In this document: positions 6,650-48,339 of the stretch, piece after piece
Layout: every line of letters starts with the position of its first letter
Position numbering within the stretch: position 1 is the first letter of the stretch
Assembly: GCF_002113885.1 (NCBI RefSeq)
Contig: NW_018408622.1
Coordinates: 741,967 to 805,966, forward strand
Reading direction: 5' to 3'
Length of the DNA stretch: 64,000 nucleotides
From: Mizuhopecten yessoensis
Taxonomy: Eukaryota
Position numbers and translations under genes: made by a program
Notes under the pieces: generated by a model
What the model saw: only the letters and a program-made list of their open reading frames with translations
Database searches by the model: none
Told to the model about the DNA's origin: nothing

Positions 6650-9600
6650 GTGGGTAATAGCGCTCAGATTTGACTAAATCTAATATAGATTTTGGTGGAA
6701 AAGATTTTGAAAAAATTAACTGTGCAATATCAAGATTGTCTCTGTTTTTGAGGTATGGTCATAATCACTATTTCATTTTAGTAGATTAAAACTGCTGTAT
6801 TCGTTGTAAATAGTGTCCTGTGCCCTTAAAGTGCTCATATCCCTTTTTCGGCACCAATATTGAAATTATATAAATGCCACAAACTGACCCACACCCTCGA
6901 TCCTGACCAGCGCTCCAGTAAATGACATTTGTTTTTTGCATAAATAGATAGATTTTAGTCAGAATTTAGTCACAAGCAGTAATTATTACTACCACCAAAA
7001 TCAGTAGAGTTAATTATAGGTATGTAGCTTACATTTTGTTATTTAAATGTTAGTGCCCTGGCCGCTTTTTATGGCAACTACGGTAGTTTCATAGGGTTTT
7101 TAGTTTCCCAGGTCATTTTTTCTGATTTCTTTGTTTTTGAAATTTTCCTTAAAAACCATCAACAGCAAAATGTAGTTATAAATATATGAAATTTCTGGAG
7201 TAATTTTTTCTGAGATTTTGGTCACAGATTATGGTCGACTCAATTGTCCCTTCAAAACAGATTGCTGAACAAAGAATGATAGGGGGAAATTGAAAAATAA
7301 TGATATTTTTTACAAATGGAAATAAAAGAATTTGATTAAAAGATGTGAAATTTACTTTATCCTGTAATTGTTTTTCTTGATTAGCTTTATAATGTTCCAT
7401 CACCAGTATGCATAGTAGTGTTACCTTAACCCTTTCACCCCTGGGTAATTTTAGTAGACTCTACCATACATTTATTCGGATGAGTCCATTATGGTCTACA
7501 GTGGTGAAAGGGTTAAGGCCTGTGAGATGGTATATGGGACTACATGTCAGTTACCTGTAATGGGCTGTTTTGCAGGGTAGATATACCTTACTGTCCTTAC
7601 CTGTAATGGGCTGTTTTGCTGGGTAGATATACCTAGCTGTCCTTACCTGTAATGGGCTGTTTTGCAGGGTAGATATACCTAGCTGTCCTTATCTGTAATG
7701 GGCTGTTTTGCAGGGTAGATATACTTAGCTGTCCTTACCTGTAATGGGCTGTTTTGCAGGGTAGATATACCTAGCTGTCCTTACCTGTATATGTTATCAT
7801 ACAGGAAGGTTATTGCTAGCTAGGTGCACAGGAATGTGCAGACTGTTTACTGCACAGTCAGGTCCAATGTCCTTGTAGACAGATAAACACCGAGGCAGAC
7901 TGTTTTCTCTGTACTGTAATTAATGGGTAACACTATACACCTTCAAATGGAACTTTGTATCCAAAACCTTTTCTATCACAGCTCAAGTTCACAATATCTA
8001 TAAGGACGCCTAAGCATTGTCTATTGAATTATGAAGTTTATGACCTCACTCACAAAACCACTTTTATGTTTAAATGTTTGAAATGTTATTCAACCCATCC
8101 TAAACTTCATCACCTGTGTTCGTGATCCGATAGATGACAAAAATAGTTCTGTAGTTTCCTGTCCAAGAATTGATTTGTTTAAAAGATTACATTTTTTGTT
8201 CAGTGTTAGGTTATAGCATGTATAACATATATGAAAGGACTGTACTTAAATACTGCCTTGATCACAATTACACAATATAAAGGAAGGTGCCTGTCTCAGA
8301 ATATAGTATTATCTGTCCTTAAATTTATACTATATACAGGGAAAGTTTTGGCAAGACAAACTTTCACCCAGACAAACTAAGGAAAACTTATACCCAGGCA
8401 AACTAAGGCAAACTTTCACCCAGGCAAACTCATACCCAGGCAAACTAAGGCAAACTTTCACCCATGCAGGCAAACTAAGGCAAACTTTCACCCAGGCAAA
8501 CTAGGCAAACTTTCACTCAGGCAGACTAAGGCAAACTTTCACCCAGGCAAACTGAGGAAAACTTATACCCAAGCAAACTAAGGCAAACTTTCACCCAGGC
8601 AAACTTATACCCAGGCAAACTAAGGCAAACTTTCACCCAGGCAAACTTATACCCAGGCAAACTTATACCCAGGCAAACTAAGGCAAGCTTTCACCCAGAC
8701 AAACTTATACCCAGGCAAACTAAGGCAAACTTTCACCCAGGCAAACTTATACCCAGGCAAATTAAGGCAAACTTATACCCTGGCAAACTTCTACCATTTG
8801 CCGATATAATCAATATCGCACAGTGTTGATTTTGCCCCTTACATTTAAATACTTCATGTTTATTATGTATGTGTATTACATTGTTTAAGAATGTTCGCTG
8901 TAATAATAAATTCCCCCTCATTATGGAAGGCAAAAGCGAAAATTTCAATGGGGTGAAAATCCTCAGTATAAAGTACTTAACAGTCATTTGGTATCAAGAT
9001 AGAATGACATCTATGGTAAAATTATCTTGAAGTGAAAATTAAAATCAGTTTGTAAATTATAATTTCAGTATTCTAAATATAAAATAAAAAACTGGAATCA
9101 GTAGCAATTATTTGGTGACCAGAGAGAAATAATGGTTGTGGTAAAACCTGTTCTTTAACCCATTCACAAATTATAATTTCAATACTCTAAATACAGATTA
9201 AGATATGCTAAAACCACCATATAATTTGCATATGTACCCTAAGAATCAATGTATATCCTGTATTTTAAACAAATGCCCATGCTTTACAAATATATGCCAT
9301 GCAATCCATTGACAAGGTTAACATTTGATCAAAGACTGTGAGTGGAAGCTAGGCTATATATATAATAAATTATGCATAGGTCACCGAGGTGGAATTTCAC
9401 GTCACTCGCACTTACACACTGTTGGGGGTTTGAAGGTTTATGGTATGTAAATAAAGATGCGAGTCATGTATTGAGTCAGGACGACCTATTGTATCAGAGT
9501 CTGGGACAAACTAGGAGATGACATGTGGGGAATTGTAATGTCGAGAGATTGACAGCATGCTGTGTGCCCTTCCAGGTTTTAAAGTCAGGTTATGTTCAAC

Positions 9601-15600: not shown

Positions 15601-18600
15601 GATATATTAATGTGTGCTATTGCATTGTCCTGTAATAAGCCCACCCATATCTGTAAGATTCGGTAGATATATTAATGTGTGCCATTGCATTGTCCTGTAA
15701 TAAGTCCACCCCCTACTTTTAGTCAGGGATTATATGTTGACCTCCTGGGATTATTACAGGAAATGCAGAAAAATGGATATGAATCATAATTACTGATCAT
15801 TACACGCTTTATATACTGTAAAATCAGATATTTTTGTGGGGCCCAAATTTTGTGGTTTCCCTCAAAAAACACCATGTCATGGGTACATTTACTCATTCAC
15901 CCCTGAAATTTCATAATGAACTATTCCAACCTTTGAATTGGAAGTGTTTAAATGTGTCTTCAGGGGTAAATGAGTTAATTTGTTGAATACAAGTATCCAC
16001 ACAAAGGGGGAATAGCTTTATGTCAAACTTATAATAATTTTGTGGACCTATGATTTTGTTATGATTACCCACAAAATCAACAAAACTTTTATCCCACGAA
16101 AAATAAGTGATTTCACAGTATTGTATTTCATATCATACAGATCGTGTTATATGTTACACTAGGAAATATTGTTTCACACTAAAATTATCCAAATAATTGA
16201 CCTAATGGAAATTTCTTAAATATAAACCAACAGTAATTATAGGAGAACACAATATTCATCTGGTTTTCAATGGTACTACATTTAGACAGATATCTTGCTT
16301 TGTTGATAGAATTCCATTATTTGGCACAACCTTATTTTGGCACCTCAGAAAAGCCAAAATTAGATTAGAATTTGGCTGAAAATGAAAGGTGAAAGAGATT
16401 CATAATAAGTGTATTTCTGAAAACGAATGTGTAGAGTGTGTTGATTTGGGCAATTGTAGACACCACGGATCATGGAGGCCACAGAGAAGAGACAGGACCC
16501 TGCCAGTCCGATACAGGAAGTGGCGAAAGAGGGCACACTCCACCTCAAAACTGACATCACTGATGGAAAGGTACAGTACTGGGTCTATAACAAAAGCTTT
16601 CTAATGTGTAATGTTAAACCTTGTATATCATCTTCATATCAAGACGTATAATAAATTAAAAACTTTATTGATTTTAAAATAATTATGATACAAGTTTTAA
16701 CAACTTATATTTATCACTCTTGTTGACCCTGATGTTGGCATGCGGGCAGGCGATCATCCCATACCTTTTCAGACCAATTGGGAAATGAAACCCCGGCTGC
16801 CTTGGTGAATGCCCTGTCATATAATGTTAATTGCTCAGAAAATATTTACAAATCTAAAGCATTGTTATTTTCTTAAGTCTTGCTGTTTGTTTGGTATGTA
16901 TTCTAGCAATCTTTGTTTTCCCCTGTCAAATACAGTAAAACCTTGTTATATTGACACCATTTGTCAAGAAAATTTTGGCATTATAAAGGAAGGAAATGTA
17001 TGGAGGAGTTGTAAAGAAAGGAAAAATGATGCATTGAAAGACATTGGTGGCAAGCAAAGTATCCAATAAAAAGAGGGGTATTACACAAAGTATCCAATAA
17101 ACAGAGGGGTATTACACAAAGTATCCAATGAAATAAGGGTATTACACAAAGTATCCAATAAAAAGAGGGGTATTACACAAAGTAGCCAATGAAATGAGGG
17201 TATTACACAAAGTATCCAATAAAAAGAGAGGTATTACACAAAGTATCCAATAAAAAGAGGGGAATTACACAAAGTATCCAATAAAAAGAGGGGTATTCCA
17301 CAAAGTAGCCAATAAAAAGAGGGGTATTACACAAAGTATCAAATAAAAAGAGGGGTATTACACAAAGTAGCCAATAAAAAGAGGGGTATTACACAAAGTA
17401 TCAAATAAAAAGAGGGGTATTACACAAAGTAGCCAATGAAATGAGGGGTATTACACAAAGTATCCAATAAAAAGAGAGGTATTACACAAAGTATCCAATA
17501 AAAAGAGGGGAATTACACAAAGTATCCAATAAAAAGAGGGGTAATACACAAAGTATCCAATAAAAAGAGGGGTATTCCACAAAGTAGCCAATAAAAAGAG
17601 GGGTATTACACAAAGTATCAAATAAAAAGAGGGGTATTACACAAAGTAGCCAATAAAAAGAGGGGTATTACACAAAGTATCCAATAAACAGAGGGTTATT
17701 ACACAAAGTATCCAATGAAATAAGGGTATTACACAAAGTATCAAATAAAAAGAGGGGTATTACACAAAGTAGCCAATAAAAAAAGGGGTATTACACAAAG
17801 TATCCAATAAAAAGCGGGGTATTACACAAAGTATCCAATAAACAGAGGGGAATTACACAAAGTATCCAATGAAATAAGGGTATTACACAAAGTATCCAAT
17901 AAAAAGAGTGGTATTACACAAAGTATCCAATAAAAAGAGGGGGATTACACAAAGTAGCCAATAAAAAGAGGGGTATTACACAAAGTATCAAATAAAAAGA
18001 GGGGTATTACACAAAGTAGCCAATGAAATGAGAGTATTACACAAAGCTTCCAATAAAAAGAGGGGTATTACACAAAGTAGCCAATGAAATGAGGGTATTA
18101 CACAAAGTAGCCAATGAAATGAGAGTATTACACAAAGCATCCAATAAAAAGAGGGGTATTACACAAAGTATCCAATAAAAAGAGTGGTATTACACAAAGT
18201 AACCAATGAAATAAGGGAATTACACAAAGTAGCCAAGAAAAAGAGGGGTATTCCACAAAGTAGCCAATGAAATGAGGGGATTACACAAAGAATCCAATAA
18301 AAAGAGGGGAATTACACAAAGTAGCCAATGAAAGGAGGGTATTACACAAGGTAGCCAATGAAATGAGGATATTACACAAAGTAGCCAAAAAAAAGAGGGG
18401 TATTCCACAAAGTAGCCAATGAAATGAGGGGATTACACAAAGTAGCCAATGAAACGAGGGTATTACACAAATTATCCGATAAAAAGAGGGGTATTCCACA
18501 AAGTAGCCAATGAAATGAGGGAATTACACAAAGTAGGCAATGAAATGAGGGGATTACACAAAGAATCCAATAAAAAGAGGGTTATTACACAAAGTAGCCA

Positions 18601-21600
18601 AGGAAATGAGAGTATTACACAAAGTATCCAATGAAATAAGGGTATTCCACAAAGTAGCCAATAAAAAGAGGGGTATTACACAAAGTATCCAATGAAATAA
18701 GGGTATTACACAAAGTAGGCAATGAAATGAGGGTATTACACAAAGTAGCCAATGAAATGAGGGTATTACACAAAGTATCCAATAAAAAGAGGGGTATTAC
18801 ACAAAGTAGGCAATGAAATGAGGGGTATTACACAAAGTAGCCAATGAAATAAGGGTATTACACAAAGTAGCCAATGAAATAAGGGTATTACAAAAAGTAG
18901 CTAATGAAATGAGGGGTATTACACAAATTAGCCAATGAAATAAGGGTATTACACAAAGTAGCCAATAAAAAGAGGGGTATTACACAAAGTAGCCAATGAA
19001 ATAAGGGTATTACACAAAGTAGCCAATAAAATGAGGGGTATTACACAAAGTAGGCAATGAAATGAGGGGTATTACAACTGGGTTACACTGTGTATTATTG
19101 GCTACAAACACATAACGATTGGATGATATATTTTTCAATTTCATGCCAGTGTGAACGCAAACTGGTTACATACATATTCCATGTAAATATGTATGTAACT
19201 GATTTGCATTCATACCAGCATGAACATTAATACTTATACTTACATTCTGAATAGTTAGTTATCACATACACTGTATATGTACTTCTTTTAGATATTTCAT
19301 TAAATTTCAATATTTTGAAATGTCTTTGTCATCAACGCAAACAAGAATCCAGTAACAGTCTAACGTCACCAAAACGTTTGATTCTCATGTAAATTGAGGC
19401 AACAGGAGAAGCTTCAAAATGACATTGATCTAATGGCTTTCATAGCTCTATGAATGCAATTTCTCATGGTAATGCATATAGAGGAACTTGCAGTGGAAAT
19501 GTAAACCTAATTTAATGTAGATGTCTGTGATTGTTACAGAGGAGCAGTGATAGGTCGTGGAAGCCTGTTTGGGTGGAGCTTAGAGGTCATGCTCTGTACT
19601 TACACAAGGAGAGGAAAGAACAATTGGGAGTGGTAAGTTTACTACCGTTAAGGTGAATTCATTCCTAGCCAGTTTTAAAAATGGTATCTGCTTGTATGAT
19701 AATTTGATATTAATCTGCTACTTTTAATTTTGTAGTTTGCTTTTCAATTCAATTCTCAATTGGCAAAGACACAATATTGTTAAATAAGATATTTTGGTAG
19801 GGCCCGGACAAAACACCATTTCATTGGTACATGAATTTGTGGATTACGAGTACCCACTAAAACTGAGAATTGCTTTATATCAAACTTGTAAATTACTTTA
19901 TGGACCTATGAACTTGTGGATGAAGATTACCAAAGAAATCAACGAAATTTAAAAAACCCACGAAAAATGGGTGATTTTACTGTAATTCTACTTGTCCATC
20001 TTTGTAATATTGGATAATGAAATTAATAAACATATAAAACATATAAAGTAGATTTTTAAAACTGAAACAATGTTTTGAAATGTTTTTTTGACAGTGCAAC
20101 CCTATAAAGGACGTTAGTATCAAGAAAACATGATAATAACCGAAAAGTGACATCAAGTGAAATGTACTGTACTAGATCTGCCAAAGTCTTATTAATTACT
20201 TTTATTTTGTCTCCAGGTACACCCTTTCTCCTTTGAGGACCAGCCGATCTCAATCAAGTCTGCCATTGTCGACATCGCCTATGACTACACAAAAAAGAAA
20301 AACGTGTTTCGTCTGAAGACATACAATGGCTCGGAGTACTTGTTCCAAGCAGAGGAGCACGAGGCCATGTTGTCATGGATACGCGCCATTCAGGAGAACA
20401 ATGACCCAGACTCGGATGTAAGGGGCACAAGATATAAAGTCAGGGTACAGTGTTTTCTCTGGATTCTTGTTTTGGCTTAATGCACAACCCGTTCTGCTTT
20501 TTTCGCTTTTCGGGACATGTCAACATCTCTTTCTCGTTAATCAGTTGACTTTGTTTTTCTGCTTCTTGCACAGTCCAACAGGCTATCTCTTCTTAGACCC
20601 AGGTCATTGCATAAGTCAGTTGGGAAAACTCCAGATACTTTTTCCCCGAGGACTATACACCTCAAGAGTATACATATATTCTTTATTCTGTAGAACTGTT
20701 TTTGTCTATATGACAGTGTTACGAGACAATATGCTAACTTCAAGTTGACTTTTCTTAAAACTGGGGAAAAAATCGCTTTTCTCGCAAAATCTGTTCAGTA
20801 AATAAGAGAAACACTTACAAACCATCTTCTCATATCTCCCAGTTGTCCACAAACCATCTTCTAATATCTCCCAGTTGTCCTTACTGGTATTTTGTAAAAC
20901 AGATTTGGTTTGGTTTGGTTTGGATTGCTTTGCTTTCATTTCTTTTCTTTTTTTTTTGGAAACAAAAATCATCTTGCTTGCTTGTAGTGCTAGTTTTAGT
21001 ATGTTATTCTGAAAGTATTTTCTTAACAACATTTTGAAACAGTGTTTGTCCAGGAGAGGACAAATCTTTTTGTTTCGGTTGTGCATTTCTCACCGACGAC
21101 GGGTAAACAGTAGAAAATACCATTTTGTACCTGACTTATTGTTTGTAAATAATTATTGAAATGTTTTGACTAGTGATAATTATATGTTATTTATATTACT
21201 GATAAGATATAGATAATAACTGAATGAAAAATCAAAGTTTAATGTATGATTAAAAACTACACCACTCTATTTACAAATGTAAATTTTGAAGATCAACTAG
21301 CACCATTACTACAAAAGTTGAATTAGAAATCAAATTTCCAGGCTTACAAATCTTTAATTTGTAAATTATGTAAATTGCAACTGAATTTTATTGTCAAGAA
21401 AATAGAATTAAAATAAATAATAATAATGAGTTGTCAAGTTTTCACTGATGCTGGGATAGTCAGCTTTCTGTGTTAGAAGCTGCAATGACTGGACATGCGG
21501 TAATTGACCAGTTGACCGGTGTTGTTGTTTACAGGAGAGGGGTTTAGCGAGTAAAGACCTGATTATTAGAAAGACCAACCAGCATGAATCAGCCCAGCCC

Positions 21601-24600
21601 CCAACCAGCGTTTCGACCAACAAGACTTCGCCGCAGGCCCCACCCAAGGCCATCAAAAAGCTACAAAGTCTCGCCCTCAAACCCAAGATACCACACTCCC
21701 CCAGTATGAAGCGCAAGAAGGCAGAAAGCAAAGGTAGGTATCCAATATGTGTCTTTAAAATGAGGGGGGATGGCAAATTGAAACTGAGTTTCAGGGTTTA
21801 ATGCCTGGGTGAAGGGTTTAATGCCTGGGTGAAGGGTTTCTGGGTGGTAGATTTTTGAGTATAACATAAACAGGGCCAGAAGGCATCGTATGGCATTTAA
21901 GAATTGTTATCTTCAGATGTTATAAAAAAGAATTCTTTCCAAATAAAAAGACTTTTGATGGATTTCCTGGGATATTAAACAGTTTTTGGTGATAATGTTC
22001 ACTATGGTAAAGTGGTAATTGGTGTCCAAGCTAAATCTTGTAAATTTGGGAGCTCTGTTGTATTATCTGCTGTCAATAGAATCTGTCGCAACATCCAACT
22101 TGTTGTTCCAGATGATAACACCAAAGCTAAGACACTCAAAGGGAAGCTGAAGAGTTTCCGTAAACACGGTGTATTAGGTTCAGGACATTCGGAAGAACAA
22201 GAGAACTCCGGGATGTTTGGGGTACCTCTATCATGTTGTATACCGTCACCTAACAATGATGTAAGTATTACATAGACAATTTACACGTAATTTTACATTT
22301 GTAATAAGGATATAAGCACTGAGATAAGTCTGATTGTTTAAAGTGGCAATGATTTGTACTTTCAGAATAAGATCAAACTGATATTATCTTAGGTTGTTCT
22401 GACCTCTGGCAGCTTTATTGCTGAGTATTTTAACTCAGATATATCTACTACCTCGGAAGTCATCAGTTTTAAGAATAGTTGTCTGTTCTTAGTTAGACAT
22501 GCGAGTACTGTGACACAGAAACATAAATAATCCATTTTAGGAACATTGTAATAAGATGTGTGTACTTTGTAATAAGAACATGTGTGCTTTGTGATAAGAA
22601 CATGTGTACTTAATTTATGATTGAAATGTGTGCACTTTGTATTAAGAATATGTGTACTTTGTAATTAGAATGCAATACCTTTTTGATTGAAATATGTGTA
22701 TTTTGTAAAAAGAATGTGTATTTTGTAATAAGAATGTGTACTTTGTAATAAGAATGTGTACTTTGTCGTAAGAAGATGAATGCACTTTGTATTAAGGATA
22801 TATAATGTTTACTTTTGCAGTTTGTGCCACTGATTGTTGACCTGTGCACTAAAATTGTGGAGGCACGAGGTCTGGAGTCGACCGGTGTGTACAGAGTTCC
22901 CGGTAACTCAGCCGCAGTCAATCACATGCAGGATGAACTCAACAAGGTTGTATTCATTATACAGAATGTGTTTTATATACTGTATACAGGGAACATTATA
23001 CAGAGTGTTTTATATACTGTGTACAGGGAACATTATACAGAATGCTTTATATACTGTATACAGTGAACATTATACAGAGTGTTTTATATACTGCTTACAT
23101 GGAACATTATATAGAATGTTTTATATACTGTATCCAGGGAACATTATACAGAATGTGTTATATACTGTATACAGGTAACATTATACAGAATGTGTTATAT
23201 ACTGTATACAGGGAAAATTATACAGAGTATTTATCTACTGTATACAGGGAACAGTATACAGAGTGTTTTATATACTGTGTACAGGGAACATTATACCGAG
23301 TGTTTTATATACTGTGTACAGGGAACATTATACCGAGTGTTTTATATACTGCTTACATGGAACATTATATAGAATGTTTTATATACGGTTTACAGGGAAC
23401 ATTATACCGAGTGTTTTATATACTGTATCCAGGGAACATTATACAGAGTGTTTATATAATGTATACAGGGAACATTATACAGTATATAAACCCTCTGTAT
23501 AATGTTCACTGTATACAGTATATAAAGCATTCTGTATAATGTTCGTTGTATACAGTATATAAAGCATTCTGTATAATGTTCGTTGTATACAGTATATAAA
23601 CCCTCTGTATAATGTTCACTGTATACAGTATATAAAGAATATTAAATAATGTTTCCTGAATACAGTATATAAAACACACTGTATAATGTTCCCTGGATAC
23701 AGTATATAAAACATTCTCTATAATGTTCCCTGTATACATTATATAAAACACTCTGTATAATGTTCACTGTATACAGTATATAAAACACAATCTGTATAAT
23801 GAATACATTACTATATGTATTCTATTATTTACAAATGTTCGCTGTAATGATAAATTTGCCCTCATTACGGAGAATCCGAACAGGCGAAAATTAAACAGCA
23901 GCAAATGTTCCCTGCATACAGTATATAAAACATTCTGTATTATGTTCCCTGTATACAGAATGTGTTTTATATACTGTATTCAGGGAACATTTGCTGCTGT
24001 TTAATTTTCGCCTGTTTTGATTCTCCGTAATGAGGGCAAATTTATCATTACAGCGAACATTTGTAAATAATAGAATACATATAGTAATGTATTCATTATA
24101 CAGAATGTGTTATATACTGTATACAGTGAACATTATACAGAGTGTTTTATATACTGCTTACATGGAACATTATATAGAATGTTTTATATACTGTATACAA
24201 GGAACATTATACAGAATGTTTTATATACTGTATACAGGGAACATTTGCTGCTGTTTAATTTTCGCCTGTTTGGATTCTCCGTAATGAGGGCAAATTTATC
24301 ATTACAGCGAACATTTGTAAATAATAGAATACATATAGTAATTAAATGCAAAGGGTGAATTTAGTATTCGGTGTAGAATTATTTTAACTTCAAAGGGGAA
24401 AATTTGGCTAGAAGAAAATTTCCCTGTATACAGTGTAGCAAATTTTATGAGTCTGGTCAAAATCATATCCATCAATTGTGTTCAGACAAACTTATTACAG
24501 AGACTAAATCAATGTTGCGAATGCAACTTATTTTCATTGATAATAAGGTCCCATAATTATTTCTGCCTTGGTCATTGTTCTTTTTATTTGCAGATAGCAG

Positions 24601-27600
24601 TGTTTATTTCTGTACATAAAAGTACAAAATGGAAAAAAGTTATAATATGTGTCTTGAGTTAAAAATCGTTATAACTTAAGTTTTGTAGCACTTTTTCTTG
24701 AACAGAAGTTATCTCTACAACATAAATCTCATAAACGTAAACAGACAATCCATAATGTGTTTTGTATTTCCAGGGCATTGATAACATGAATGTTGACCAT
24801 GAGAAGTGGTGCGATGTTAACGTCATCAGCAGTCTACTGAAGGCATTCTTCAGAAAGTTGCCTGATCCACTGATCACTACAGGTAGGTAGCTAACTGTGA
24901 TTCACAAACAAAATTAAATTTATGGGTCATTTTTAGAATTTAATTAACAGTCATTTTTTTTAGAGAATTATTTCAGTATTTTTCTTCACGAACTTTAACC
25001 AGAAACAAAATAGACAAGAGCCGCTTTCGTTTATCGCGACCCAAACAGTTGAACATGTTGGAACAGAGTTAAACGTTTATGAAATGAGTCGGACCTAGTA
25101 ATCTGATGCTGCTTTCAGGCGAGCCATGACAAAGCCTTGCAAGGCCTGCATAAATATTTGCAGATCTACTTGAATTTATACCTGAAAAAGTTAGATTTAA
25201 AAATGAACCGGATGCACTAAACGGGCCTGATGAAACAATTGTCAATCAAGGGAGATAAATCTGGTCTACTTAACATACAAAGATTTATTTTTAAACCTGA
25301 AAACAATTTTTAATAAAGGAACATGTCTTATCCTTCCTCATTTAAGGGACTCCTTGTTTTTTAAAAAAATGATGTATATTATATAGATTTGTATTCTGTT
25401 TGGTTATTGAGGAGTAATGACAAAAAATGGAAAGATCTTGCCTGTGCCGTACTGCAGTAATCACCAGTAAATATTTAAGCAATAAACTAAATATATGTGG
25501 CAGACCTACTGTTTTAACTGCCGATGTGTCACAAACAAACTGTCACAGACAAACTGAATGGTGCACGCTAGCAGTTTATCGCTTATATTTACATTTTCGT
25601 TATGAAAAACTGCTAAATAGAGGATCTGTCATAAGTTTCCCTTCATATTGGATTTATGATACAAGTTTTAGATTTTTCATGTAGGCGAGCCTCATAAATT
25701 GAATATGAAGAGAAACGAATGACTGATTCGTTATATCATATAATACAAAATAAACTGTTTATACACAACAAAAACGATGAAACAACAGTTTACCTGTTTA
25801 TTACAATTCGAGATATTTAAATGAGGCAGATAGCAAGATAAAAAGAAAATACAAACTTATACTTTGGCGTATCAGGGGCTACGTATACTCACTCAACACT
25901 ATAAGCTAACTATATACAATACTACAAAAACAAACGTGTACTGACGAGGTAGCCTCCTAAGCAAAGAAAGAGGCCACAAGGAAAAAAAATATATATTCTC
26001 AGCAATATATTTAAAGTAGCTAGCCAGACAACTCTTGAGCGATTCAAGACAGGCCAAATGTAAATATCTAGTGAACGTTCTTGAGCGATTCAAGACAGTA
26101 TATACATGTAGATATCTAGAGCAAACCCTTGAGCGATTCAAGAGCTGCATATAAAATACTCATATATATAAGTAGTAAAGAAAACTTTTAAGCGATTTAA
26201 AAGCAGAGAGATTTTGCCTTGAGCGATTCAAGAGAGGCAAACTGACCACCAGACTTAAGCGATTTAAGAGCTGGCAAGACGAAACTCCTGAGCGATTCAA
26301 GAGCCTAGTAGTTTCAAGAATAGACAGAAAAATTAAAGCAAAAGCAGTAAAATAATCAACAGATAAGTAAATAATGCCTCTTGGAAACGAGCTACCGGAT
26401 CGTACGGAACAACTGTAGAATTCCTACTTTTAGACCCCATGTCTTAAAACTATTGTCGATAGGCCTGAATATCAACGTTATATATAGCCTAAGGTGTAGG
26501 TTAGCACGGTCGAATGCACGTACAATGTCAAGTTCACACCGTAATGACGAATCACGGCGAAGTATTTGCTCACAATAATTGTATAGGAAGTGCGTCAAGT
26601 CCTTAAACACGAAGTTGTAAGGTGGTATTATTCGTACAACAGTAAATGATCAGTAGGCTGCCTTGCTCCCAGTGTGTACAGTAGCGTAGCCACACCTCAA
26701 GTCCAAAAATCATGCAGAAAGTAAACAAACGTTCTCCTCATACTGATTCACGTTTACAGCGTAACAAACTGGCGAAAGTTAAATCATATGGCGATGACTG
26801 TCACTGAGTAATCGTGGTGTAGTTTAAGATAAATCCATAGTGTAGTAAACACTTGAAAAGTCGAAGAATACGCGAAAAGCAAACACACCAACACCCGCCG
26901 GAAATCAATAATGAGGGGCACTGACAATACCACATACCCTCTAGGGGTTAATGCTGATTGGTTAACTCTCCCCTAATTTGCATAAAAACATAAACATGAA
27001 AAACCTAGATACAAGAATATTACCACACGTAAACAAGGAAATGAACTTAAGTAAATTCACACATATATATCTAACTGTTCCACTGTAGAAAAACAACCTA
27101 TGATATATATAAGCAAGGGAGCAATAAAAGTTGTATATAAACTATAATTTAACACACTTGTCAAATTATCATTATAATTGTGATCAGAAATGAATATTTT
27201 GCACTTGGTCGCCTCTGAAACGATGAAAATTGTGTCAGCTTCACAATGACGTGATGTCACATTGATTGTTCCTATTCGATTGTGACGTCATTTCCGGAGT
27301 GATATTACACACGTTACTTAAACATAATTTATGTGATGGCTTAATGACACTGCATAACACAGTATTGATATGATAAAAAGGTATATCTCTTTTACAACTT
27401 TCAAATTTCCTGCTTATTACCATCAGGTCCTGTCTGTATCTAGAAGGGCACAAAGATAACAGCTGACGTCACGCTCTATTTCCCATACAAAATTGAAAAG
27501 ACTATCGTTATTGATTCATTTGTTTTTAAAATATAGAATATTCTCAATTAACAAAATATACACAAATAACATTATGTTAGTAGCTATTCAATTGACGTAA

Positions 27601-30600
27601 GACCTTTTACTGATTGTTTTATTGTGGCCTATATTCTAACATTGTGCAAGTCAGATGTATTCATACGCCCTGCAACCAACTTCAGTTATAGTCTCATAAC
27701 ATGAAGCTGCTATAGGCAGTAATTTAGTAGTAATATAGAAAGGCCTCACTAAATGTAAGTGTATCTGTTTCCACAGAGCTGTACCAGAGCTTTATCAACG
27801 CCAATCAGACTGGGGACCCTGAGCGACGCATGCTCAAGGTTAAGAGGTTATTACATGACCTTCCGGAACATCATTTCGAGACATTTAGACACCTGGCCGA
27901 ACATCTCAACAAAGTCGCCTCCTACGATCAAGTCAATAAGGTGAGGCTCGGATCTAAGCATAGGTGCATGATGTTAAAACATGTTGGTATTGAACATATC
28001 CTTCTGCTTAATTACGATTTTCAAACACAATTTGCTAACATAAAGTAACACTTAGAATATAGTCAATCACAGCTTTTAAACTGATCTTGATTATTTATAG
28101 ATGGACACACGAAACTTGGCCCTGATGTTTGGTCCAACTCTGATTCGCCAAATCAACGATGACATGGCAAGCATTGTTAAGGACATGTCGGACCAGTGTC
28201 GCATTGTGGAGAGTATCATATCTCATGTAAGTTGTGTACAAGTGAACCTGGCTAAAACATAGCTGTGAACCCTCCCTCATTAGGAGGGAAACTCCCTCAT
28301 TTTGACCACAGTCTACCAATCTCTGTAGAAACTCCCTCATTCAAGTCCAAATTCGCACAAACCCAGAATCTCCATCCTGTGGTCAAATGATCTCCTAGTT
28401 ACTACAGGGTGTGCGTAATTAACATAACAGGTGTGTCTGAATCAAATGAATGCTTTTTTGAGTTATTTTGATACATATAAAGGGAAAAGAAAAATGAATT
28501 GAGCAAAACAGTTTCAGTCAAGTTTCACGCACTCTCTCCCTCATTGGAAATGTGGAATGAGGGAGATCTCCCTCATTGGAGGTTTCAGATGTTGACACCT
28601 ATATAACAATATATCAGCTCACAACTAAATATGGTAAAGCATATGCTTTCCTCCACCAGTTTGTAAATTGTATTAAATTCTCTAAAAATTCAAGTTTTTC
28701 ATTGACCCTGTTCTTCATAGAGGTACATGATTGTTGTTTTGGTATAATTTTATCACTATAGACTTTAAAAATTCTTCTCAACAATTCATGGATGGTAGGC
28801 AAAGACTAGCAGTTATATTCTGTCTTGCAGTATGAATGGTTCTTCAGCTCTTGGGACCAAGACCGCTATGTACCAGTGGACGAGAACTATGAGGAAAATA
28901 ATCGACCGTCTAACACCTCCTTCTCAAGGATGTCCTGTGACGATGATGGTAAGTTCGGACCTCTCTGCAATGTCAACATTATTCCTTGGTTTGTTCTACT
29001 ATCTGTCCGCCCTTACAAATCTCTGCCCAACTACACTGTAGGTTGTTCGTACATACAGCAAACCACCCTTAACTTCTGTTTGGATATATTAACTGTAGAA
29101 CAGTTGGGCCAGGATACTTCTGTCAATGAGGTAGCTCAATCGTTTGGAGCGATAGTATAACAATCTGGGCCCAGTTGTTCAAAAGGTGATTAGCTTAATC
29201 AGTGATTAGCACAAGTTTTAATTTTCTTGTATCTTAAAAACGAAACCATTGAATTAGTTACAACTTTCCAGATATTAAATATTAAGTAGAGTGAATTTAT
29301 ATGCAAAAGTGTGAGATTATACCTGGTATATTGACGAAATTATTAAAGGTTGAAAAGTGTTGTTAACTATTGATTAAGCTAATCACCTTTTGAAAAACTG
29401 GCCCCTGAAGTCCAGGGTTCAAATGACAGTGTTGCCCTGCTGCTCGTTTTACACCCACAACACTGCTGTTGATTATTTTTATGTTTATTTCCTCTCAACT
29501 ATTTTTCATATATATGCGGCAAGATAATTTAAGGTTTGCTTTTTAGAAATTATTTATCAAAACTAAAGTCATGTCAGCAAAATTGGTTTCAAGTGCATAG
29601 ATACAGATTTTGGTGGCAGTACGGGGATCCTTAAGTTTCTGCAAGATAACTTGCTTATCATAATTAATTTCGGTGAAACTTGGTATATACATATATACAA
29701 AGGCTTAAAGGCCGAGTTCGAAAATGAAGTTAAGAATATCATTAAACTTACTTTTAACTTTTAATTGCAATTTAAATCAGTCTGACTATATTTGATATAT
29801 ATCTATCAATTATATACCTGTGACTTAAATAAACAATTGAAAAAAAACATTTTGTCAAAGATATTCATTTCTGGCCATGATTTGATTTTTGGCTATTTCA
29901 AAGGAAAAGGAGGTTATTTATTTAATTATTATATATCTTTTGTTCCTGGAGTATTGCTTTGCATTGTAAGAGCTTTGAATACCACCATATTTGTGGTGAA
30001 ATTTGGTTAGTAAGTTCATGGTACTGAGGCTAATGCCAATACTGTTATGGCACAGGAGGTACCTGAAATTAAGAAATGTCTATCAGATTCATCCTTTCCA
30101 AACCTTTGTTTTGTGAGACTGACAGAAATCCATCTGTTTTTATTTCAGACAATGCCAACAATCCGAAATACATTGTGTCGTCATTTGTACAAGCAGCGAA
30201 AAAACGTGGGAAGGGAGAAGACGAGGTGGATGCCAGCCAACCACCGGCGCCACCATACAGGGAGCGCAACATTGATCAGGAGGTGGCTAAACACCGCATG
30301 AAAACACAAAACGAGACAACACAGAGCAGCCCCAATCTCACCACTGTTCTCAAAACTATGCCACAACAGATTCAGGTGGTTGTACGCACAACAGAAAATC
30401 CCAACGATCGGCGGATGGCAAAGTCCCAGGAGATTTTAGATCCTGATTGGGAATACATAGATTCAGAGCGACAATCTCAAAGTATGATAATTAAACCGAG
30501 ACATTACTCGGAAGATTCTCTGGATAAGAATGATGAGATGGAGTTATCTTCTCAGGGTGGTCTCAGTTCTGGTTTCAGTGTGAGTCGTGATACGATAGAT

Positions 30601-34437: not shown

Positions 34438-34691
34438 ATATTTAAGGGTATGGAAGTAATGTACTAAACATACTTATTTTAGTGCACTGAGATATTAGTG
34501 CATTATTGAATTTTAACAGATTAGTGCATTAATGAATTGGCTCACCCACCAAATATTTAATAGAAAATAATAAACATGATCCTCAATTGGTGCAATCATA
34601 ATTTAGTACAACGTTTAAAGCCTGATAAAGGACTAAAATGTTACTTCTGCGAACATATGTATGTTTACAGTAATAATAACAAATCAAGACA

Positions 34692-34782
34692 TTAACTCAT
34701 TCACCCCTGAAATTTCATAATGAACTATTCCAACCTTTGAATTGGAAGAGTTCAAATGTGCCTTCAGGGGTGAATGAGTTAA
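34692..34782. mobile_element. piggyBac-like MITE, subfamily B
   Basis: TTAA-CTCATTCACCCCTGAA...TTCAGGGGTGAATGAG-TTAA. Confidence 0.88.
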
Positions 34783-39239: not shown

Positions 39240-39825
39240 CTGAAAAACGAAATTAAGGTTAGATATAGAAAGATCACAGAAGGAACTGAGGAGACACCAA
39301 AATAAAAGAAACCCCAAATAAGGAGTTGAGGAGACACCAACACAACAGGAAACCCCAAATAAGCAATTAATGAGACACCAAAACAACAGGAATCCCCAAA
39401 TAAGGAATTGAGGCGACACTAAAACAACAGGAACCCTTAAATAAAGCGGTGAGGAGACACCAAAACCACAGGAACCCTTAAACAAGAGGCCCAAAGGCAT
39501 TGGCGGTCACCTGAGTTATATCAAAGGTACAGGTAGTTGAATTTCGTTAGGTAATGATAATTTAGTTAAGGATCTTTCCTTCCATGAACAGTAAAACATC
39601 TGAGTCTTATGAAGAAGATTTTTTTTAACTTTTAACCATTATCACCTTTTGGGCCCCACCCCTCCAGCCCCTGGGGATGGGACAGGCTCTTATTTTCTCA
39701 TACCATCTTATTGCCATCTAGAATCATAATCATTCCAACCAAGTTTGAATAATTTCCTGCTGAAAATGGACAAAATATACCCAAAATTCAATATTTCCCT
39801 ATATAAATTAAAGTCAACTTTACCC
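39240..39825 (-). repeat. 586-bp inverted duplicate of 42502-43087
   Basis: Reverse complement matches with identical length and no mismatch seen; explains the identical ORFs 39171-39500(-) and 42827-43099(+). Confidence 0.95.
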
Positions 39826-40552: not shown

Positions 40553-41673
40553 ACATTACACACTGTTCACTTTACATGTGACACATGCAGTTTTACTGAC
40601 TTTTATTCATGGATCAATTTGTTTAAGTTGGCTTCTCATTGTTCTTATTAAGGACGTTTAAAACTCTTTAGAGAACTTACACTTTGAATACAGCTGATTT
40701 GCGTTTCCACATTTGGCATTATCTGGTTAGGTACGACATGTTGACAAACAAACCATTAACAGAAATTGATGATCGTCATCCTGACCTGATTTCTACGATA
40801 ATTAAACGGCTGCTGTTCCTGTTTGGATTTTGTTTTTTTTATTGACGATATGCCATCATATGGAATATTTGTACATTTTTATCAATAGACGAATGCAAAG
40901 AATTACAAAATAGATAACGTTTTCAATGATTTCCGTATTTATTTATGTACATGTATTTACTTCACCCATTTGTATTATTATATTTTTCACACAATATGTT
41001 GATGTCCTGATGTTCGTATTGTTTGTAGAGCTTAAAATGTTTGGAAAACCCTAACACATAGAAGAATAAAACCTGTTATTATCAATTTAACAGTGACCTA
41101 CTATATTGACTATCTGACCCTCTAGTAGCAGCTGGTTCACCTTAGATTTTGTCGGGTTGATAAACTTGTTTTCTTTTGGTATCAACCCAGTTCCTGATCT
41201 GGTCTTTTCTTTTGTTTCCTCAGTTCCATATTTTGGGCTTCCTTTTATTTTGGTGTCTCCTCAGTTCCTTATTTGGTTTTAACTTTGTATTGGTGTCTCC
41301 TCGGTCCCTGTTGTTGTTTTGGTTTCTCCTCAGTTTCTTATTGTTTTTTATTTTGGGTTTCCTTTTGGTTTGGTGTCTCCTCAAGGCTTTATTTAAGGGT
41401 TCCTGTTGTTTAAGTGTCTCATCGGTTCTTTATTTTGGGTTTCCGTTTGTTTTGGTGTCTTCTCAGCGTTTTATTTAAGGGAACCTATTGTTTTGGTGTC
41501 TCATCGGTTCCTTATTTTGTGTTTTCTTTTTTGGTGTCTTCTCAGTTCCTTATTTTGGGTTTAACTTTGTTTTGGTCTCCTCGGTCCCTGGTGTTGTTTT
41601 CCTTTTTGTTTTGGTGTCTCCTCAGTTTCTTATTTGTGGTTTCCGGGTTTTTTTTGTGTCTCCTCAACGCTTT

Positions 41674-42846
41674 ATAAGGTCACCTGGGCCCACTTGTATA
41701 AAACATCTCAACTCTTGAGATTTCCTCAAGTCTAAGATTTTCCATAGACAATACATTGCTTGAGATTTTCCTTAACTTTGAGATGTTTTATACAAGTGGG
41801 CCCTGAGCTTTGCGCAAGTTACATTTTCTGATCGCTTTCCGTTGTCGTTGTGCGTTGTCCGTCGTGCGTCGTCCGTCGTGCGTAAACGTTTAACATTTTC
41901 GACTTCTTCTCAAGAACCAGCGGATGGATTTTTTTCAAACTAAGCCAGAATCATCCTTGGTAGATGAGGCCACCAAATTATAAAATTGGGTATCTACCTT
42001 AACCCAAGGGGCCAGGGTGGGGTACCAAAGGGAAAATTTACCAATATTTCAAAAATCTTTTTCTCCAGACTCAGAGGTACATATACTACAGTCAATTTCT
42101 CTGCATGGATGGAAAAATCATCAGGGGCTTTATTTGAATTCTAATTTTCAGTACCCCCCGGGCTATCCGTTCTACCTTGGGGCGGGGATCAAGTTTTCTA
42201 TAGTTTATTTAGGGAAAAAACACTTTTAGGTATATCTTGGCTATTTTCAGTTGGAAATTAATCTTACTTGGTGAGAATCATCCTTTGAGGAAGATGGTAT
42301 CAAATTGTAAAATTCAGATTCCTACCCCAACCCCCAGGAGCCAGGGCGGGGCACCAAAGGGAAAATTAACACAATATTTCAAAAATATTCTTCTTCAGGA
42401 TGTATTATAATCAAATTCTGTGGATGGGTATAAAATCCGTTAGGGGCTTTGTGTATTTTTCAATTTAATACCCCCGGGCCATCCATTCTCGCTTGGAGAG
42501 GGGGTAAAGTTGACTTTAATTTATATAGGGAAATATTGAATTTTGGGTATATTTTGTCCATTTTCAGCAGGAAATTATTCAAACTTGGTTGGAATGATTA
42601 TGATTCTAGATGGCAATAAGATGGTATGAGAAAATAAGAGCCTGTCCCATCCCCAGGGGCTGGAGGGGTGGGGCCCAAAAGGTGATAATGGTTAAAAGTT
42701 AAAAAAAATCTTCTTCATAAGACTCAGATGTTTTACTGTTCATGGAAGGAAAGATCCTTAACTAAATTATCATTACCTAACGAAATTCAACTACCTGTAC
42801 CTTTGATATAACTCAGGTGACCGCCAATGCCTTTGGGCCTCTTGTT
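41674..42846 (+). mobile_element. Helentron-associated non-autonomous element (HINE/DINE-1-like)
   Basis: Subterminal inverted repeats GGTCACCTGAG / CTCAGGTGACC, CGTC/GTCC microsatellite (41838-41883), central repeats of about 320-bp period, short 3' stem-loop and CTCTTGTT end, inserted in a T run without TSD. Confidence 0.85.
41684..41805. mobile_element. PIF/Harbinger-like MITE nested in the HINE 5' subterminal repeat
   Basis: CTG-GGCCCACTTGTATAAAACATCTCAA...TTGAGATGTTTTATACAAGTGGGCC-CTG; excision restores GGTCACCTGAG. Confidence 0.92.
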
Positions 42847-47135: not shown

Positions 47136-48210
47136 TACTGTCTGTTGTAAGAGTAATTTCTATAGTGCTAACAATATCTACTGTCTGTTGCAAGAGTAAT
47201 TTCTATAGTGCTAACAATATCTACTGTTTGTTGTAAGAGTAATTTCTATAGTGCTAACAATATCTACTGTTTGTTGTAAGAGTAATTTCTATAGTGCTAA
47301 CAATATCTACTGTTTGTTGTAAGAGTAATTTCTATAGTGCTAACAATATCTACTGTTTGTTGTAAGAGTAATTTCTATAGTGCTAACAATATCTACTGTT
47401 TGTTGTAAGAGTAATTTCTATAGTGCTAACAATATCTACTGTTTGTTGTAAGAGTAATTTCTATAGTGCTAACAATATCTACTGTTTGTTGTAAGAGTAA
47501 TTTCTATAGTGCTAACAATATCTACTGTTTGTTGTAAGAGTAATTTCTATAGTGCTAACAATATCTACTGTTTGTTGTAAGAGTAATTTCTATAGTGCTA
47601 ACAATATCTACTGTTTGTTGTAAGAGTAATTTCTATAGTGCTAACAATATCTACTGTTTGTTGTAAGAGTAATTTCTATAGTGCTAACAATATCTACTGT
47701 TTGTTGTAAGAGTAATTTCTATAGTGCTAACAATATCTACTGTTTGTTGTAAGAGTAATTTCTATAGTGCTAACAATATCTACTGTTTGTTGTAAGAGTA
47801 ATTTCTATAGTGCTAACAATATCTACTGTTTGTTGTAAGAGTAATTTCTATAGTGCTAACAATATCTACTGTTTGTTGTAAGAGTAATTTCTATAGTGCT
47901 AACAATATCTACTGTTTGTTGTAAGAGTAATTTCTATAGTGCTAACAATATCTACTTTCTGTTGTAAGAGGAATTTCTATAGCGCTAACAATATCTACTG
48001 TTTGTTGTAAGAGTAATTTCTATAGTGCTAACAATATCTACTGTTTGTTGTAAGAGTAATTTCTATAGTGCTAACACTATCTACTTTCTTTTGTAAGAGT
48101 AATTTATATAGTGCTAACAATATCTACTTTCTGTTGTAAGAGTAATTTCTATAGTGCTAACAATATCTACTTTCTGTTGTAATAGTAATTTATATAGTGC
48201 TTACAATATC
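47136..48210. repeat. 43-bp minisatellite, about 25 units, homogeneous core
   Basis: ttgtaagagtaatttctatagtgctaacaatatctactgtttg; variants confined to the edges. Confidence 0.98.
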
Positions 48211-48339
48211 GCCTGAAAATATTGTTACGTTTATGCTTTCAAAGAAGCAGCTTTCGTCTCTTGGTTTCGTTGGGAGTTTATGATAATTGTTTTGTTGTGT
48301 TTAAGTTTCTCTTCGACTCCTTATATGGACTTTCCTTCT

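What the first reader, a model, noticed from the sequence alone, without database searches (positions are those of the whole stretch)
26034..26301. Seven-hairpin array with invariant loop, compensatory stem changes and minus-strand-only G-U pairs
Seen: seven copies of CTTGA-GCGAT-TCAAG at irregular spacing (46, 48, 59, 31, 36, 33 nt) separated by mostly dissimilar spacers. The core AGCGATT never varies. Copy 4 (TTTAA-GCGAT-TTAAA) and copy 6 (CTTAA-GCGAT-TTAAG) change both arms together and keep pairing. Copy 7 (CCTGA..TCAAG) is a C-A mismatch on + but a U-G wobble on -. Copies 3, 4 and 7 extend to 8 bp on - only, through G-U pairs. Inference: this pattern fits selection on an RNA stem-loop (CUUGA-AUCGC-UCAAG) in a minus-strand transcript rather than neutral satellite decay. 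It could be a multivalent protein-binding array such as a Gag packaging, export or anti-silencing signal in a retroelement R region. I do not recognise the motif from any described family.
Basis: partly seen in the sequence, partly recalled or inferred. Interest (0 to 1): 0.85.

Follow-up and report, generated by a model that had tools for sequence, protein, structure and literature searches.

The report
Palindrome array in scallop intron insertion
Seven copies of a 15-base hairpin-capable palindrome with an unchanging centre sit in a lineage-specific insertion, probably a small DNA transposon, inside an intron of a scallop RhoGAP gene. The motif looks constrained, but nothing shows it acts as minus-strand RNA or belongs to a retroelement.

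Summary
Seven copies of the 15-nt palindrome lie at 26034-26301 with the stated spacings, and there are none elsewhere in 64 kb (0.15 expected). The 7-nt centre never varies. Two stem pairs change on both sides.

The core is far better kept than the spacers: pairwise identity is 0.88 against 0.32-0.45, with 0.27 expected by chance. It is the only recurring hairpin-type motif in a window full of minisatellites.

- **Palindromy:** its retention is unlikely by chance (p about 0.001-0.01), so some constraint or mechanism is acting.
- **Strand:** the minus-strand G-U signal rests on about three independent events. The A+C-rich plus strand accounts for it: 19% of control windows are as asymmetric, and the residual z is -1.0.
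- **Retroelement:** no LTR or retroelement gene is present. Instead the array lies between 14-nt inverted repeats flanked by an 8-nt direct repeat (0 of 300 shuffles), which suggests a 1.34-kb hAT-like non-autonomous transposon.
- **Host:** the array is in an intron of a plus-strand RhoGAP 23-like gene of a scallop. The same intron in Argopecten irradians is 0.5 kb and lacks the insertion.

No other copies could be found, so the family-wide covariation test could not be run. My best reading is a transposon-borne multi-site binding array, read as a hairpin or as duplex DNA. Interest is moderate to low.

The parts
26034..26301 (.). Array of seven 15-nt palindromic (5-bp arm, 5-nt centre) motifs, all in the same orientation, at irregular spacing. 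It is a degenerate tandem repeat.
26034..26048 (.). Copy 1 (commonest form); 6 pairs on both strands
26080..26094 (.). Copy 2 (commonest form)
26128..26142 (.). Copy 3 (commonest form); 8 pairs on minus through G-U
26187..26201 (.). Copy 4; stem pairs 1 and 4 changed on both sides; all five pairs are A-T, so the core alone is not stable as RNA at 37 C
26218..26232 (.). Copy 5 (commonest form)
26254..26268 (.). Copy 6; stem pair 4 changed on both sides; an outer 4-5-bp helix lies beyond an internal loop
26287..26301 (.). Copy 7; one arm change (C-A on plus, G-U on minus)
25669..27007 (.). Candidate 1.34-kb non-autonomous TIR element that carries the array. Most of it (about 25700 onward) lies in an A-rich plus-strand stretch that runs on to about 27120; 25863-26926 has no CpG depletion.
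25669..25682 (+). Left terminal inverted repeat (14 nt)
   Evidence: (I9)
26994..27007 (-). Right terminal inverted repeat (13 of 14 complementary to the left one)
   Evidence: (I9)
25658..25665 (.). Left copy of the 8-nt direct repeat (candidate target-site duplication), separated from the TIR by 3 nt
27008..27015 (.). Right copy of the 8-nt direct repeat, abutting the TIR
24874..27776 (+). Host intron (2.9 kb) of the RhoGAP 23-like gene. Orthologous introns are about 0.5 kb (Argopecten), about 1.2 kb (L002) and at most 1.85 kb (Tegillarca).
24755..24873 (+). Upstream host exon (RhoGAP domain region)
27777..27942 (+). Downstream host exon (RhoGAP domain region)

Best explanation
The array is a lineage-specific piece of mobile DNA in an intron of a scallop RhoGAP 23-like gene. 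It is most likely the interior of a 1.34-kb non-autonomous DNA transposon with terminal inverted repeats and an 8-nt target duplication.

Shown: the array arose by tandem duplication of a unit of about 30-50 nt. Since then the spacers have diverged almost to randomness in sequence and length. The 15-nt palindrome has kept its 5-nt asymmetric centre unchanged and its arms complementary.

Inferred: the motif is a recognition site present in many copies, that is, a multivalent platform for one sequence-specific factor. I commit to the version in which the site is read as a short hairpin in single-stranded nucleic acid, with the invariant centre displayed on a stem whose pairing matters more than its sequence. 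This could be RNA of either strand, or single-stranded DNA. That version best explains arms changing together around a fixed, non-symmetric centre. Which strand is read, which factor binds and what the binding does are all unknown. The selection would have acted in the transposon lineage, not on the host gene.
For: - **Uniqueness:** seven copies, unique in the window, against 0.15 expected. It is the only recurrent hairpin-type motif in 64 kb despite 99 tandem-repeat rows.
- **Conservation:** core identity 0.88 and centre 1.0, against flanks 0.32-0.45 and chance 0.27.
- **Covariation:** two pair positions changed on both sides, with p about 0.001-0.01 for two such events. Pairing extends into non-identical flanks in most copies. 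The weak A-T-rich copy 6 gains an outer helix.
- **Folding:** the array folds better than shuffles on both strands (z -4.77 on minus, -2.05 on plus). Six of the seven local hairpins appear in the minus-strand minimum-energy fold.
- **Insertion:** the TIR plus 8-nt direct repeat occurs in 0 of 300 shuffles. The plus strand is A-rich from about 25700 to 27120, and CpG o/e is 1.0 over 25863-26926 against 0.59 for the window.
- **Orthologous sites:** the same intron is 0.5 kb in Argopecten irradians, 1.2 kb in L002 and at most 1.85 kb in Tegillarca. None has the motif or any similarity to the insertion.
- **Context:** DNA elements including MITEs are over-represented in bivalves, and hAT occurs in all mollusc genomes analysed (PMC10294476).
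Against: - Only one locus with seven tandem-derived copies, which are not independent. The covariation amounts to two events.
- Shuffle controls on the 8-bp helix are marginal: 18-23 of 500 on minus and 46-176 of 500 on plus.
- The 5-bp core hairpin is weak: -2.3 kcal/mol as RNA at 37 C, and 0.0 for copies 4 and 6. As single-stranded DNA with 6-nt flanks the copies give -1.7 to -5.4 kcal/mol.
- No relative was found in Rfam, the literature or any collection.
- No expression data were available.
- A real 104-nt hairpin at 25624-25727 (z -4.41) straddles the left TIR, and 3 nt separate that TIR from the direct repeat. The element bounds are therefore a candidate, not a fact.
- The array is internal (365-632 nt from the left end) and lies on one side only.
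Confidence: 0.4

Rival explanations
1. One reading: the motif is an RNA stem-loop in a minus-strand transcript of a retroelement (R region). It acts as a multivalent protein-binding signal for packaging, export or anti-silencing.
For: More cells pair on minus than on plus (87.5% against 75%), with 7 G-U cells against none. Fold z is -4.77 on minus and -2.05 on plus. Copies 3, 4 and 7 reach 8 bp on minus only. The three flank pairs are paired in 14 of 21 cells on minus and 8 of 21 on plus. An element antisense to the host gene is the usual orientation for intronic insertions (own knowledge).
Against: The strand difference is ordinary for this sequence: 19% of windows are as asymmetric, and the residual z is -1.0 after allowing for G+T content. 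The G-U cells come from about three column events in tandem-derived copies. TIR plus 8-nt duplication points to a DNA transposon. The plus strand is the A-rich one, which is the usual sense-strand bias of retroelements (own knowledge). No evidence of minus-strand transcription was available.
Confidence: 0.15
2. The motif is read as duplex DNA. The array is a homotypic cluster of binding sites for a host transcription or insulator factor, or for the transposase or an accessory protein of the autonomous partner element.
For: A palindromic site is repeated seven times at irregular spacing with A/T-rich, unrelated spacers inside a candidate TIR element. An invariant CpG-containing centre sits in a segment with no CpG depletion. 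The isolated hairpins are thermodynamically weak. Arrays of protein-binding sites inside mobile elements are well known: subterminal transposase sites of hAT and CACTA elements, and the Su(Hw) site array of gypsy (own knowledge).
Against: The best-conserved part is the non-symmetric centre, not the half-sites. A dimer reading two half-sites does not require both to change together, yet they do so twice. Transposase sites normally lie near both ends and in both orientations. Here there is one internal cluster with all copies in one orientation.
Confidence: 0.27
3. The array has no function. It is a decaying minisatellite whose palindromic core persists through mutational mechanisms: hairpin-templated template switching that restores arm complementarity, and slippage or conversion seeded by the longest identical stretch.
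For: The window is saturated with minisatellites (99 TRF rows). Copies 1-3 are an ordinary 46-48-nt tandem repeat. Template switching in replication can create and maintain perfect hairpins and yields apparently compensatory double changes in one event (PMC8794818). The array is absent from all three orthologous introns examined, so there is no sign of host-level conservation.
Against: Template switching keeps arms complementary but does not keep the loop or the identity between copies. Four of the seven cores are identical and the 7-nt centre is invariant, while the spacers are near chance identity and vary from 16 to 44 nt. No other minisatellite in the window shows a conserved hairpin core. 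A 15-24-nt identity tract is short for conversion (own knowledge).
Confidence: 0.18

Closest known systems
Tandem-repeat-bearing MITE-like / non-autonomous DNA elements of bivalves (pearl, DTC84, Helentron-derived HINEs; own knowledge, not tested by sequence)
   Same: A short non-coding mobile element in a bivalve genome that carries a small internal array of tandem repeats. DNA elements and MITEs are abundant in bivalves (PMC10294476).
   Different: Those arrays have regular units of about 150-170 bp that decay evenly. Here the units are 31-59 nt, with a 15-nt palindromic core conserved far above the spacers. No sequence similarity could be tested because no bivalve repeat library was on hand.
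Subterminal transposase-binding repeats of hAT and CACTA transposons (Ac, En/Spm; own knowledge)
   Same: A short motif repeated many times at irregular spacing inside an element with TIRs. The 8-nt target duplication is the hAT hallmark.
   Different: Those motifs lie within about 250 bp of both ends and in both orientations. Here there is a single cluster 365-632 nt from one end, and all copies share one orientation.
Su(Hw) binding-site array in the 5' untranslated region of Drosophila gypsy (own knowledge)
   Same: About a dozen copies of a short site at irregular spacing, separated by A/T-rich spacers, within about 350 bp of a mobile element. It acts as a multivalent platform.
   Different: That site is read as duplex DNA by a zinc-finger protein, is not palindromic and shows no paired arm changes. 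Gypsy is an LTR retroelement, whereas no LTR features are seen here.
Protein-binding RNA hairpins with a 5-bp stem and a pentaloop (phage boxB type) and coat-protein operator hairpins (own knowledge)
   Same: Same size class (15 nt: 5-bp stem plus 5-nt loop). The loop sequence is fixed and the stem sequence is free as long as it pairs.
   Different: There is no homology and a different loop. Natural seven-fold arrays of such hairpins are not a described family. There is no Rfam match at any threshold up to E = 1.
Bacterial REP/BIME clusters recognised by RAYT transposases (own knowledge)
   Same: Clusters of short imperfect palindromes with a conserved short core, read as hairpins in single-stranded DNA.
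   Different: That system is prokaryotic. The two-copy and three-copy patterns are absent from 185,579 prokaryote genomes.
Hairpins created and maintained by replication template switching (PMC8794818)
   Same: Perfect short inverted repeats in which both arms change in one step, mimicking compensatory evolution.
   Different: This is a mutational process, not a family. It does not explain conservation between copies or the invariant loop.

Membership tests
LTR retroelement (array in the R region) | Two long terminal direct repeats, or a solo LTR with inverted dinucleotide termini and a 4-6-nt target duplication | tested here: not met
No direct repeat of 80 nt or more involves 24400-29000. There is no similarity of 24400-29000 to the rest of the window.
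LTR retroelement (array in the R region) | gag/pol coding sequence or remnants next to the LTR | tested here: not met
   All ORFs of 130 aa or more in the window are host exons or translated minisatellites. Small ORFs at 24400-30000 show only RhoGAP exon pieces. Small ORFs were not scanned against Pfam.
hAT-like non-autonomous DNA transposon | Terminal inverted repeats | tested here: met
   14-nt arms at 25669-25682 and 26994-27007, 13 of 14 complementary (I9, 40).
hAT-like non-autonomous DNA transposon | 8-nt target-site duplication abutting the TIRs | tested here: inconclusive
   An identical 8-mer lies at 25658-25665 and 27008-27015. TIR plus 8-mer occurs in 0 of 300 shuffles. However, 3 nt intervene on the left, and a 104-nt hairpin straddles that end.
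hAT-like non-autonomous DNA transposon | Several dispersed copies with the same ends, and empty sites in relatives | not testable with these tools
   No eukaryote genome collection can be searched by DNA. The orthologous introns of three bivalves lack the segment but are otherwise unalignable.
Plain minisatellite | Head-to-tail units of one period | tested here: inconclusive
   TRF finds period 48 for only 2.5 units at 76% matches. The other units are 31-59 nt.
Plain minisatellite | Even decay along the unit | tested here: not met
   Core identity 0.88 and centre 1.0, against flanks 0.32-0.45.
Any curated RNA family (Rfam 15) | Covariance-model match | tested here: not met
   No match over the array at E up to 1. 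There are only three sub-threshold chance hits elsewhere in 24000-29000.
Selected RNA stem-loop on the minus strand | Compensatory changes beyond chance | tested here: inconclusive
   Two core pair positions change on both sides (three cells). A third pair position, in the minus-strand flank, adds one more cell. Shuffle controls give 18-23 of 500 on minus, and p is 0.001-0.01 for two double events. The copies are not independent.
Selected RNA stem-loop on the minus strand | Strand asymmetry (G-U against A-C) beyond base composition | tested here: not met
   The energy difference of -14.9 kcal/mol is matched or exceeded by 19% of windows. The residual z is -1.0 after regression on G+T.
Selected RNA stem-loop on the minus strand | A minus-strand transcript exists | not testable with these tools
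   No expression data. The host gene is on plus, so plus-strand intron RNA is the only transcript that can be inferred.
Conserved host intronic element | Present at the orthologous site in related species | tested here: not met
   Absent from the orthologous introns of Argopecten irradians (L005), Tegillarca granosa (L001) and a third bivalve (L002).

The most novel reading that the evidence does not exclude
The motif is a previously undescribed protein-recognition hairpin: a 5-bp stem of free sequence with an invariant pentaloop. A scallop transposon family would use it in multi-copy arrays, read in a transcript or in single-stranded DNA, for example to recruit a factor that handles the element's nucleic acid or shields it from silencing.
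Probability: 0.18. Interest if true: 0.65.

Novelty: new variant of a known kind. Interest (0 to 1): 0.35.

Why it matters
If genome-wide copies confirm the constraint, this would be a natural multivalent hairpin or palindrome array carried by a mollusc DNA transposon. It would be a compact and easily recognised signature for a repeat family in scallops that has no match in the libraries searched here. It would also offer a handle on how such elements recruit host or element-encoded factors. As it stands it is one locus in one genome. Its main value is as a well-defined query (motif, orientation, candidate ends) for a family-wide test.

Tried and rejected
- **Rfam.** The scan of 24000-29000 at E up to 1 gave nothing on the array.
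- **Literature.** A search for the four motif strings returned only chance sgRNA or primer hits.
- **Public collections, two-copy pattern.** It found nothing in viral, metagenome and prokaryote-genome collections.
- **Public collections, looser three-copy pattern.** It found two metagenome contigs (L003, L004). There the letters lie in a regular 51-nt coding repeat of a 162-aa ORF on a contig that looks like a giant virus, so the match is unrelated chance. One search was in the wrong frame. There was no hit in prokaryote genomes.
- **Protein route to other arrays.** I searched the spurious minus-strand ORF over the array (25899-26150) as a protein to find other arrays in gene-called eukaryote contigs. 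No candidate scored.
- **Exact look-up.** The last host exon's product is not on record.
- **Covariance model.** A model built from the seven copies found only those seven in the window and in L001 and L002.
- **Other target-duplication candidates.** An 11-nt direct repeat at 25772/27218 and a 10-nt one at 25928/26723 are at chance level for this A/T-rich DNA.
- **Other readings considered and dropped.** tRNA or SINE origin: no tRNA found. Protein-coding repeat: the spacings are not multiples of three and there is no plus-strand ORF. CRISPR-like repeat-spacer array: this is a eukaryote and spacer lengths are irregular. Hammerhead or other ribozyme: no Rfam hit.
- **Argopecten 7-mer.** A recurring 7-mer identical to the reverse complement of the centre in L005 belongs to an unrelated 157-nt satellite without palindromic arms.
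- The last exon was searched alone, and the other exons were mapped by DNA alignment. After the first viral scan I ran no further pattern scans of the viral collection, to avoid fetching an animal virus by pattern.
Full report
**Observation.** They start at 26034, 26080, 26128, 26187, 26218, 26254 and 26287, which gives spacings of 46, 48, 59, 31, 36 and 33. With one mismatch allowed, the degenerate pattern has no other match on either strand of the 64-kb window. Shuffles give 0.15 on average and never more than 2. The centre is asymmetric, so the motif has an orientation, and all seven copies share it. The 7-nt centre and the base just 3' of the core are invariant.

Copy 4 changes stem pairs 1 and 4 on both sides. 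Copy 6 changes pair 4 on both sides. Copy 7 has a single arm change that is C-A on plus and G-U on minus. Copies 3, 4 and 7 reach eight contiguous pairs on minus only.

One correction is needed. Copies 1-3 are an ordinary 46-48-nt tandem repeat with homologous spacers (TRF period 48, 76% matches; 82% over 38 nt), and a few bases beside the core recur in most copies. So the array arose by tandem duplication and then diverged.

**Is it more than chance or plain decay?** Yes.
- Mean pairwise identity is 0.88 in the 15-nt core and 1.0 in the loop plus closing pair. It is 0.32-0.45 in the 8 nt on either side and 0.32 further out. Chance identity for this composition is 0.27.
- Spacer lengths range from 16 to 44 nt.
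- The window has 99 tandem-repeat rows. Even so, this is the only motif with a perfect 5-bp stem and a 3-7-nt loop that recurs three or more times within 600 nt.
- Two random substitutions in the stem keep a perfect palindrome with probability 0.04-0.11. Two independent double events therefore have p of about 0.001-0.01. This treats the pair-4 change shared by copies 4 and 6 as one event.

**Strand.**
- On an 8-bp helix, 87.5% of cells pair on minus and 75% on plus. There are seven G-U cells on minus and none on plus.
- The array folds at -81.2 kcal/mol on minus (z -4.77) and at -66.3 on plus (z -2.05).
- However, the seven G-U cells come from three alignment columns of tandem-derived copies, which is about three events.
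- The plus strand here is A- and C-rich. That alone turns mismatches into A-C on plus and G-U on minus.
- In 319 control windows of 296 nt, the strand difference has an sd of 12.5 kcal/mol. Nineteen per cent are at least as asymmetric as the array. After regression on G+T content the array's residual is 1 sd.

The strand claim is therefore not established. The hairpins are also weak. The core alone gives -2.3 kcal/mol as RNA at 37 C, and 0.0 for copies 4 and 6. With six flanking bases the values are -4.3 to -10.1 on minus and -2.9 to -6.0 on plus, and about 3-5 kcal/mol better at 15 C. As single-stranded DNA the copies with 6-nt flanks give -1.7 to -5.4.

**Context.**
- The window comes from a scallop. 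A bHLH gene at 52286-52873 is 96% identical to Mizuhopecten yessoensis and about 90% identical to Pecten, Argopecten and Ylistrum.
- The first half of the window is the 3' half of a plus-strand rho GTPase-activating protein 23-like gene. Its last exon is 88% identical to the Argopecten irradians protein.
The large exon was searched alone and the others were mapped by DNA alignment to three orthologous loci.
- The array lies in the intron 24874-27776. That intron is 2.9 kb here, about 0.5 kb in Argopecten (L005), about 1.2 kb in L002 and at most 1.85 kb in Tegillarca (L001).
- Only about 50 nt at the 5' end and 25 nt at the 3' end of the intron align with Argopecten. None of the three orthologous introns holds the motif.

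So the array is lineage-specific, not a conserved host element. The plus strand is certainly transcribed as intron RNA.

**What carries it.** Nothing supports a retroelement.
- No long direct repeat involves the region.
- Positions 24400-29000 match nothing else in the window.
- No ORF of 130 aa or more is retroelement-like.

Instead, 14-nt inverted repeats (13 of 14) at 25669-25682 and 26994-27007 are flanked by an identical 8-mer at 25658-25665 and 27008-27015. This configuration appeared in 0 of 300 shuffles of the intron. Most of the bounded 1.34 kb lies in a stretch of positive AT skew that runs from about 25700 to 27120. CpG o/e over 25863-26926 is 1.0, against 0.59 for the window. The size fits the excess intron length.

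An 8-nt duplication is the hAT hallmark (own knowledge), and hAT and MITEs are common in bivalves (PMC10294476). There are caveats. Three bases separate the left repeat from the 8-mer. A genuine 104-nt hairpin at 25624-25727 (z -4.41) straddles that end. Without other copies the bounds remain a candidate.

**Relatives.** None was found.
- Rfam and the literature gave nothing relevant.
- The viral, metagenome and prokaryote collections gave nothing for the two-copy pattern.
- The looser three-copy pattern also found nothing in the prokaryote genomes.
- A protein search with the spurious ORF over the array gave nothing.
- The covariance model built from the seven copies found only those seven.
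- In the metagenomes the three-copy pattern hit two contigs, where the letters encode a peptide repeat. These are unrelated.

No eukaryote genome collection is searchable by DNA here, and the source species is not in the protein collection.

**Mechanism.**
- Shown: origin by tandem duplication, a strongly conserved asymmetric centre, arms that stay complementary through two double changes, a lineage-specific insertion, and a candidate TIR and target duplication.
- Inferred: the motif is a multi-copy recognition site kept by selection in the transposon lineage.

I commit, at 0.4, to a hairpin read in single-stranded nucleic acid, because co-varying arms around a fixed non-symmetric centre are what a hairpin-reading protein would produce. 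The rivals are:
- A duplex-DNA site cluster for a host factor or transposase (0.27). This is favoured by the weak hairpins and the transposon setting. It is disfavoured by the symmetric arm changes and the one-sided, one-orientation cluster.
- A functionless minisatellite maintained by template switching and slippage (0.18; PMC8794818). This explains paired arm changes but not identity between copies or the invariant loop.

**Verdict.** The feature is real, statistically unusual and unclassified, but it is a single lineage-specific locus. The most interesting part of the claim, strand-specific RNA selection in a retroelement, is not supported by the controls. Interest is 0.35. It would rise sharply if genome-wide copies show independent compensatory changes.

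Noticed in passing
window 25624-25727: An imperfect 104-nt hairpin: 43-nt arms 79% complementary, DNA fold -19.3 kcal/mol, z -4.41. It encloses the left 8-mer and the left TIR of the candidate element in its loop. A sub-threshold miRNA-family hit in Rfam (26.9 bits against a gathering score of 83) is the same hairpin. Its relation to the element is unexplained.
   Followed up: partly
window 27283, 27464, 44595, 45117, 59732, 59959, 60030: The 8-nt palindrome TGACGTCA occurs seven times against 0.64 expected (0 of 100 shuffles reach seven). The sites are grouped in twos and threes. Two lie in the same intron, 276 and 457 nt right of the candidate element.
   Followed up: no
window 39240-39825 and 42502-43087: A 586-nt inverted repeat, 100% complementary and 2.7 kb apart, containing 41-nt minisatellite units. 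These units recur at 41213-41666 and, in a 2.3-kb array, at 48339-50639. This looks like a foldback-type structure or an assembly inversion.
   Followed up: no
window 7423-7516, 15885-15978, 34689-34782; L005 3439-3527 and 13988-14057: A 94-nt MITE-like element with terminal inverted repeats, in three copies in the window (62-95% identical). It is also present in the Argopecten irradians orthologous locus at 74-94% identity, so this family is shared between scallop genera.
   Followed up: no
window, whole: Minisatellite density is extreme, with 99 TRF rows. Examples are 31 nt x 66 at 17055-19076, 43 nt x 25 at 47136-48210, 41 nt x 55 at 48339-50639 and 37-nt arrays in both orientations at 22955-24245. 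Several lie in introns of the RhoGAP gene.
   Followed up: no
window 25863-26926: CpG observed/expected is 1.0 here, against 0.59 for the whole window and 0.59-0.78 in the rest of the intron. The segment is either young or escapes methylation-driven decay.
   Followed up: partly
window 26957-26983 and 26479-26487: On the minus strand, just inside the right TIR, there are an octamer-like and a CCAAT-like string. A TATA-like palindromic run lies about 180 nt upstream of the array in minus orientation, and it reads the same on plus. They are suggestive of a promoter on either strand but were not tested.
   Followed up: no
window 52286-52873: A bHLH gene (helix-loop-helix protein 13-like, PTF1A/Fer type), 96% identical to Mizuhopecten yessoensis. 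This identified the source as a pectinid.
   Followed up: yes
L005 9004-13571: A satellite of about 157 nt, with at least 16 units, lies in an upstream intron of the Argopecten RhoGAP gene. It contains the reverse complement of the array's 7-nt centre by chance and has no palindromic arms.
   Followed up: yes
L003 365-853, L004 about 390-890: Metagenome contigs that look like a giant virus of a protist: A/T-rich, with a translation-elongation-factor-like gene. They carry a 162-aa ORF with a 17-residue serine/leucine-rich peptide repeat whose DNA happens to contain the A-T-rich variant of the palindrome.
   Followed up: partly
window 25772-25782 and 27218-27228: An 11-nt exact direct repeat brackets the whole A-rich stretch. 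It is an alternative target-duplication candidate (1.4-kb insert), but it is about as likely as not by chance in this A/T-rich DNA.
   Followed up: partly
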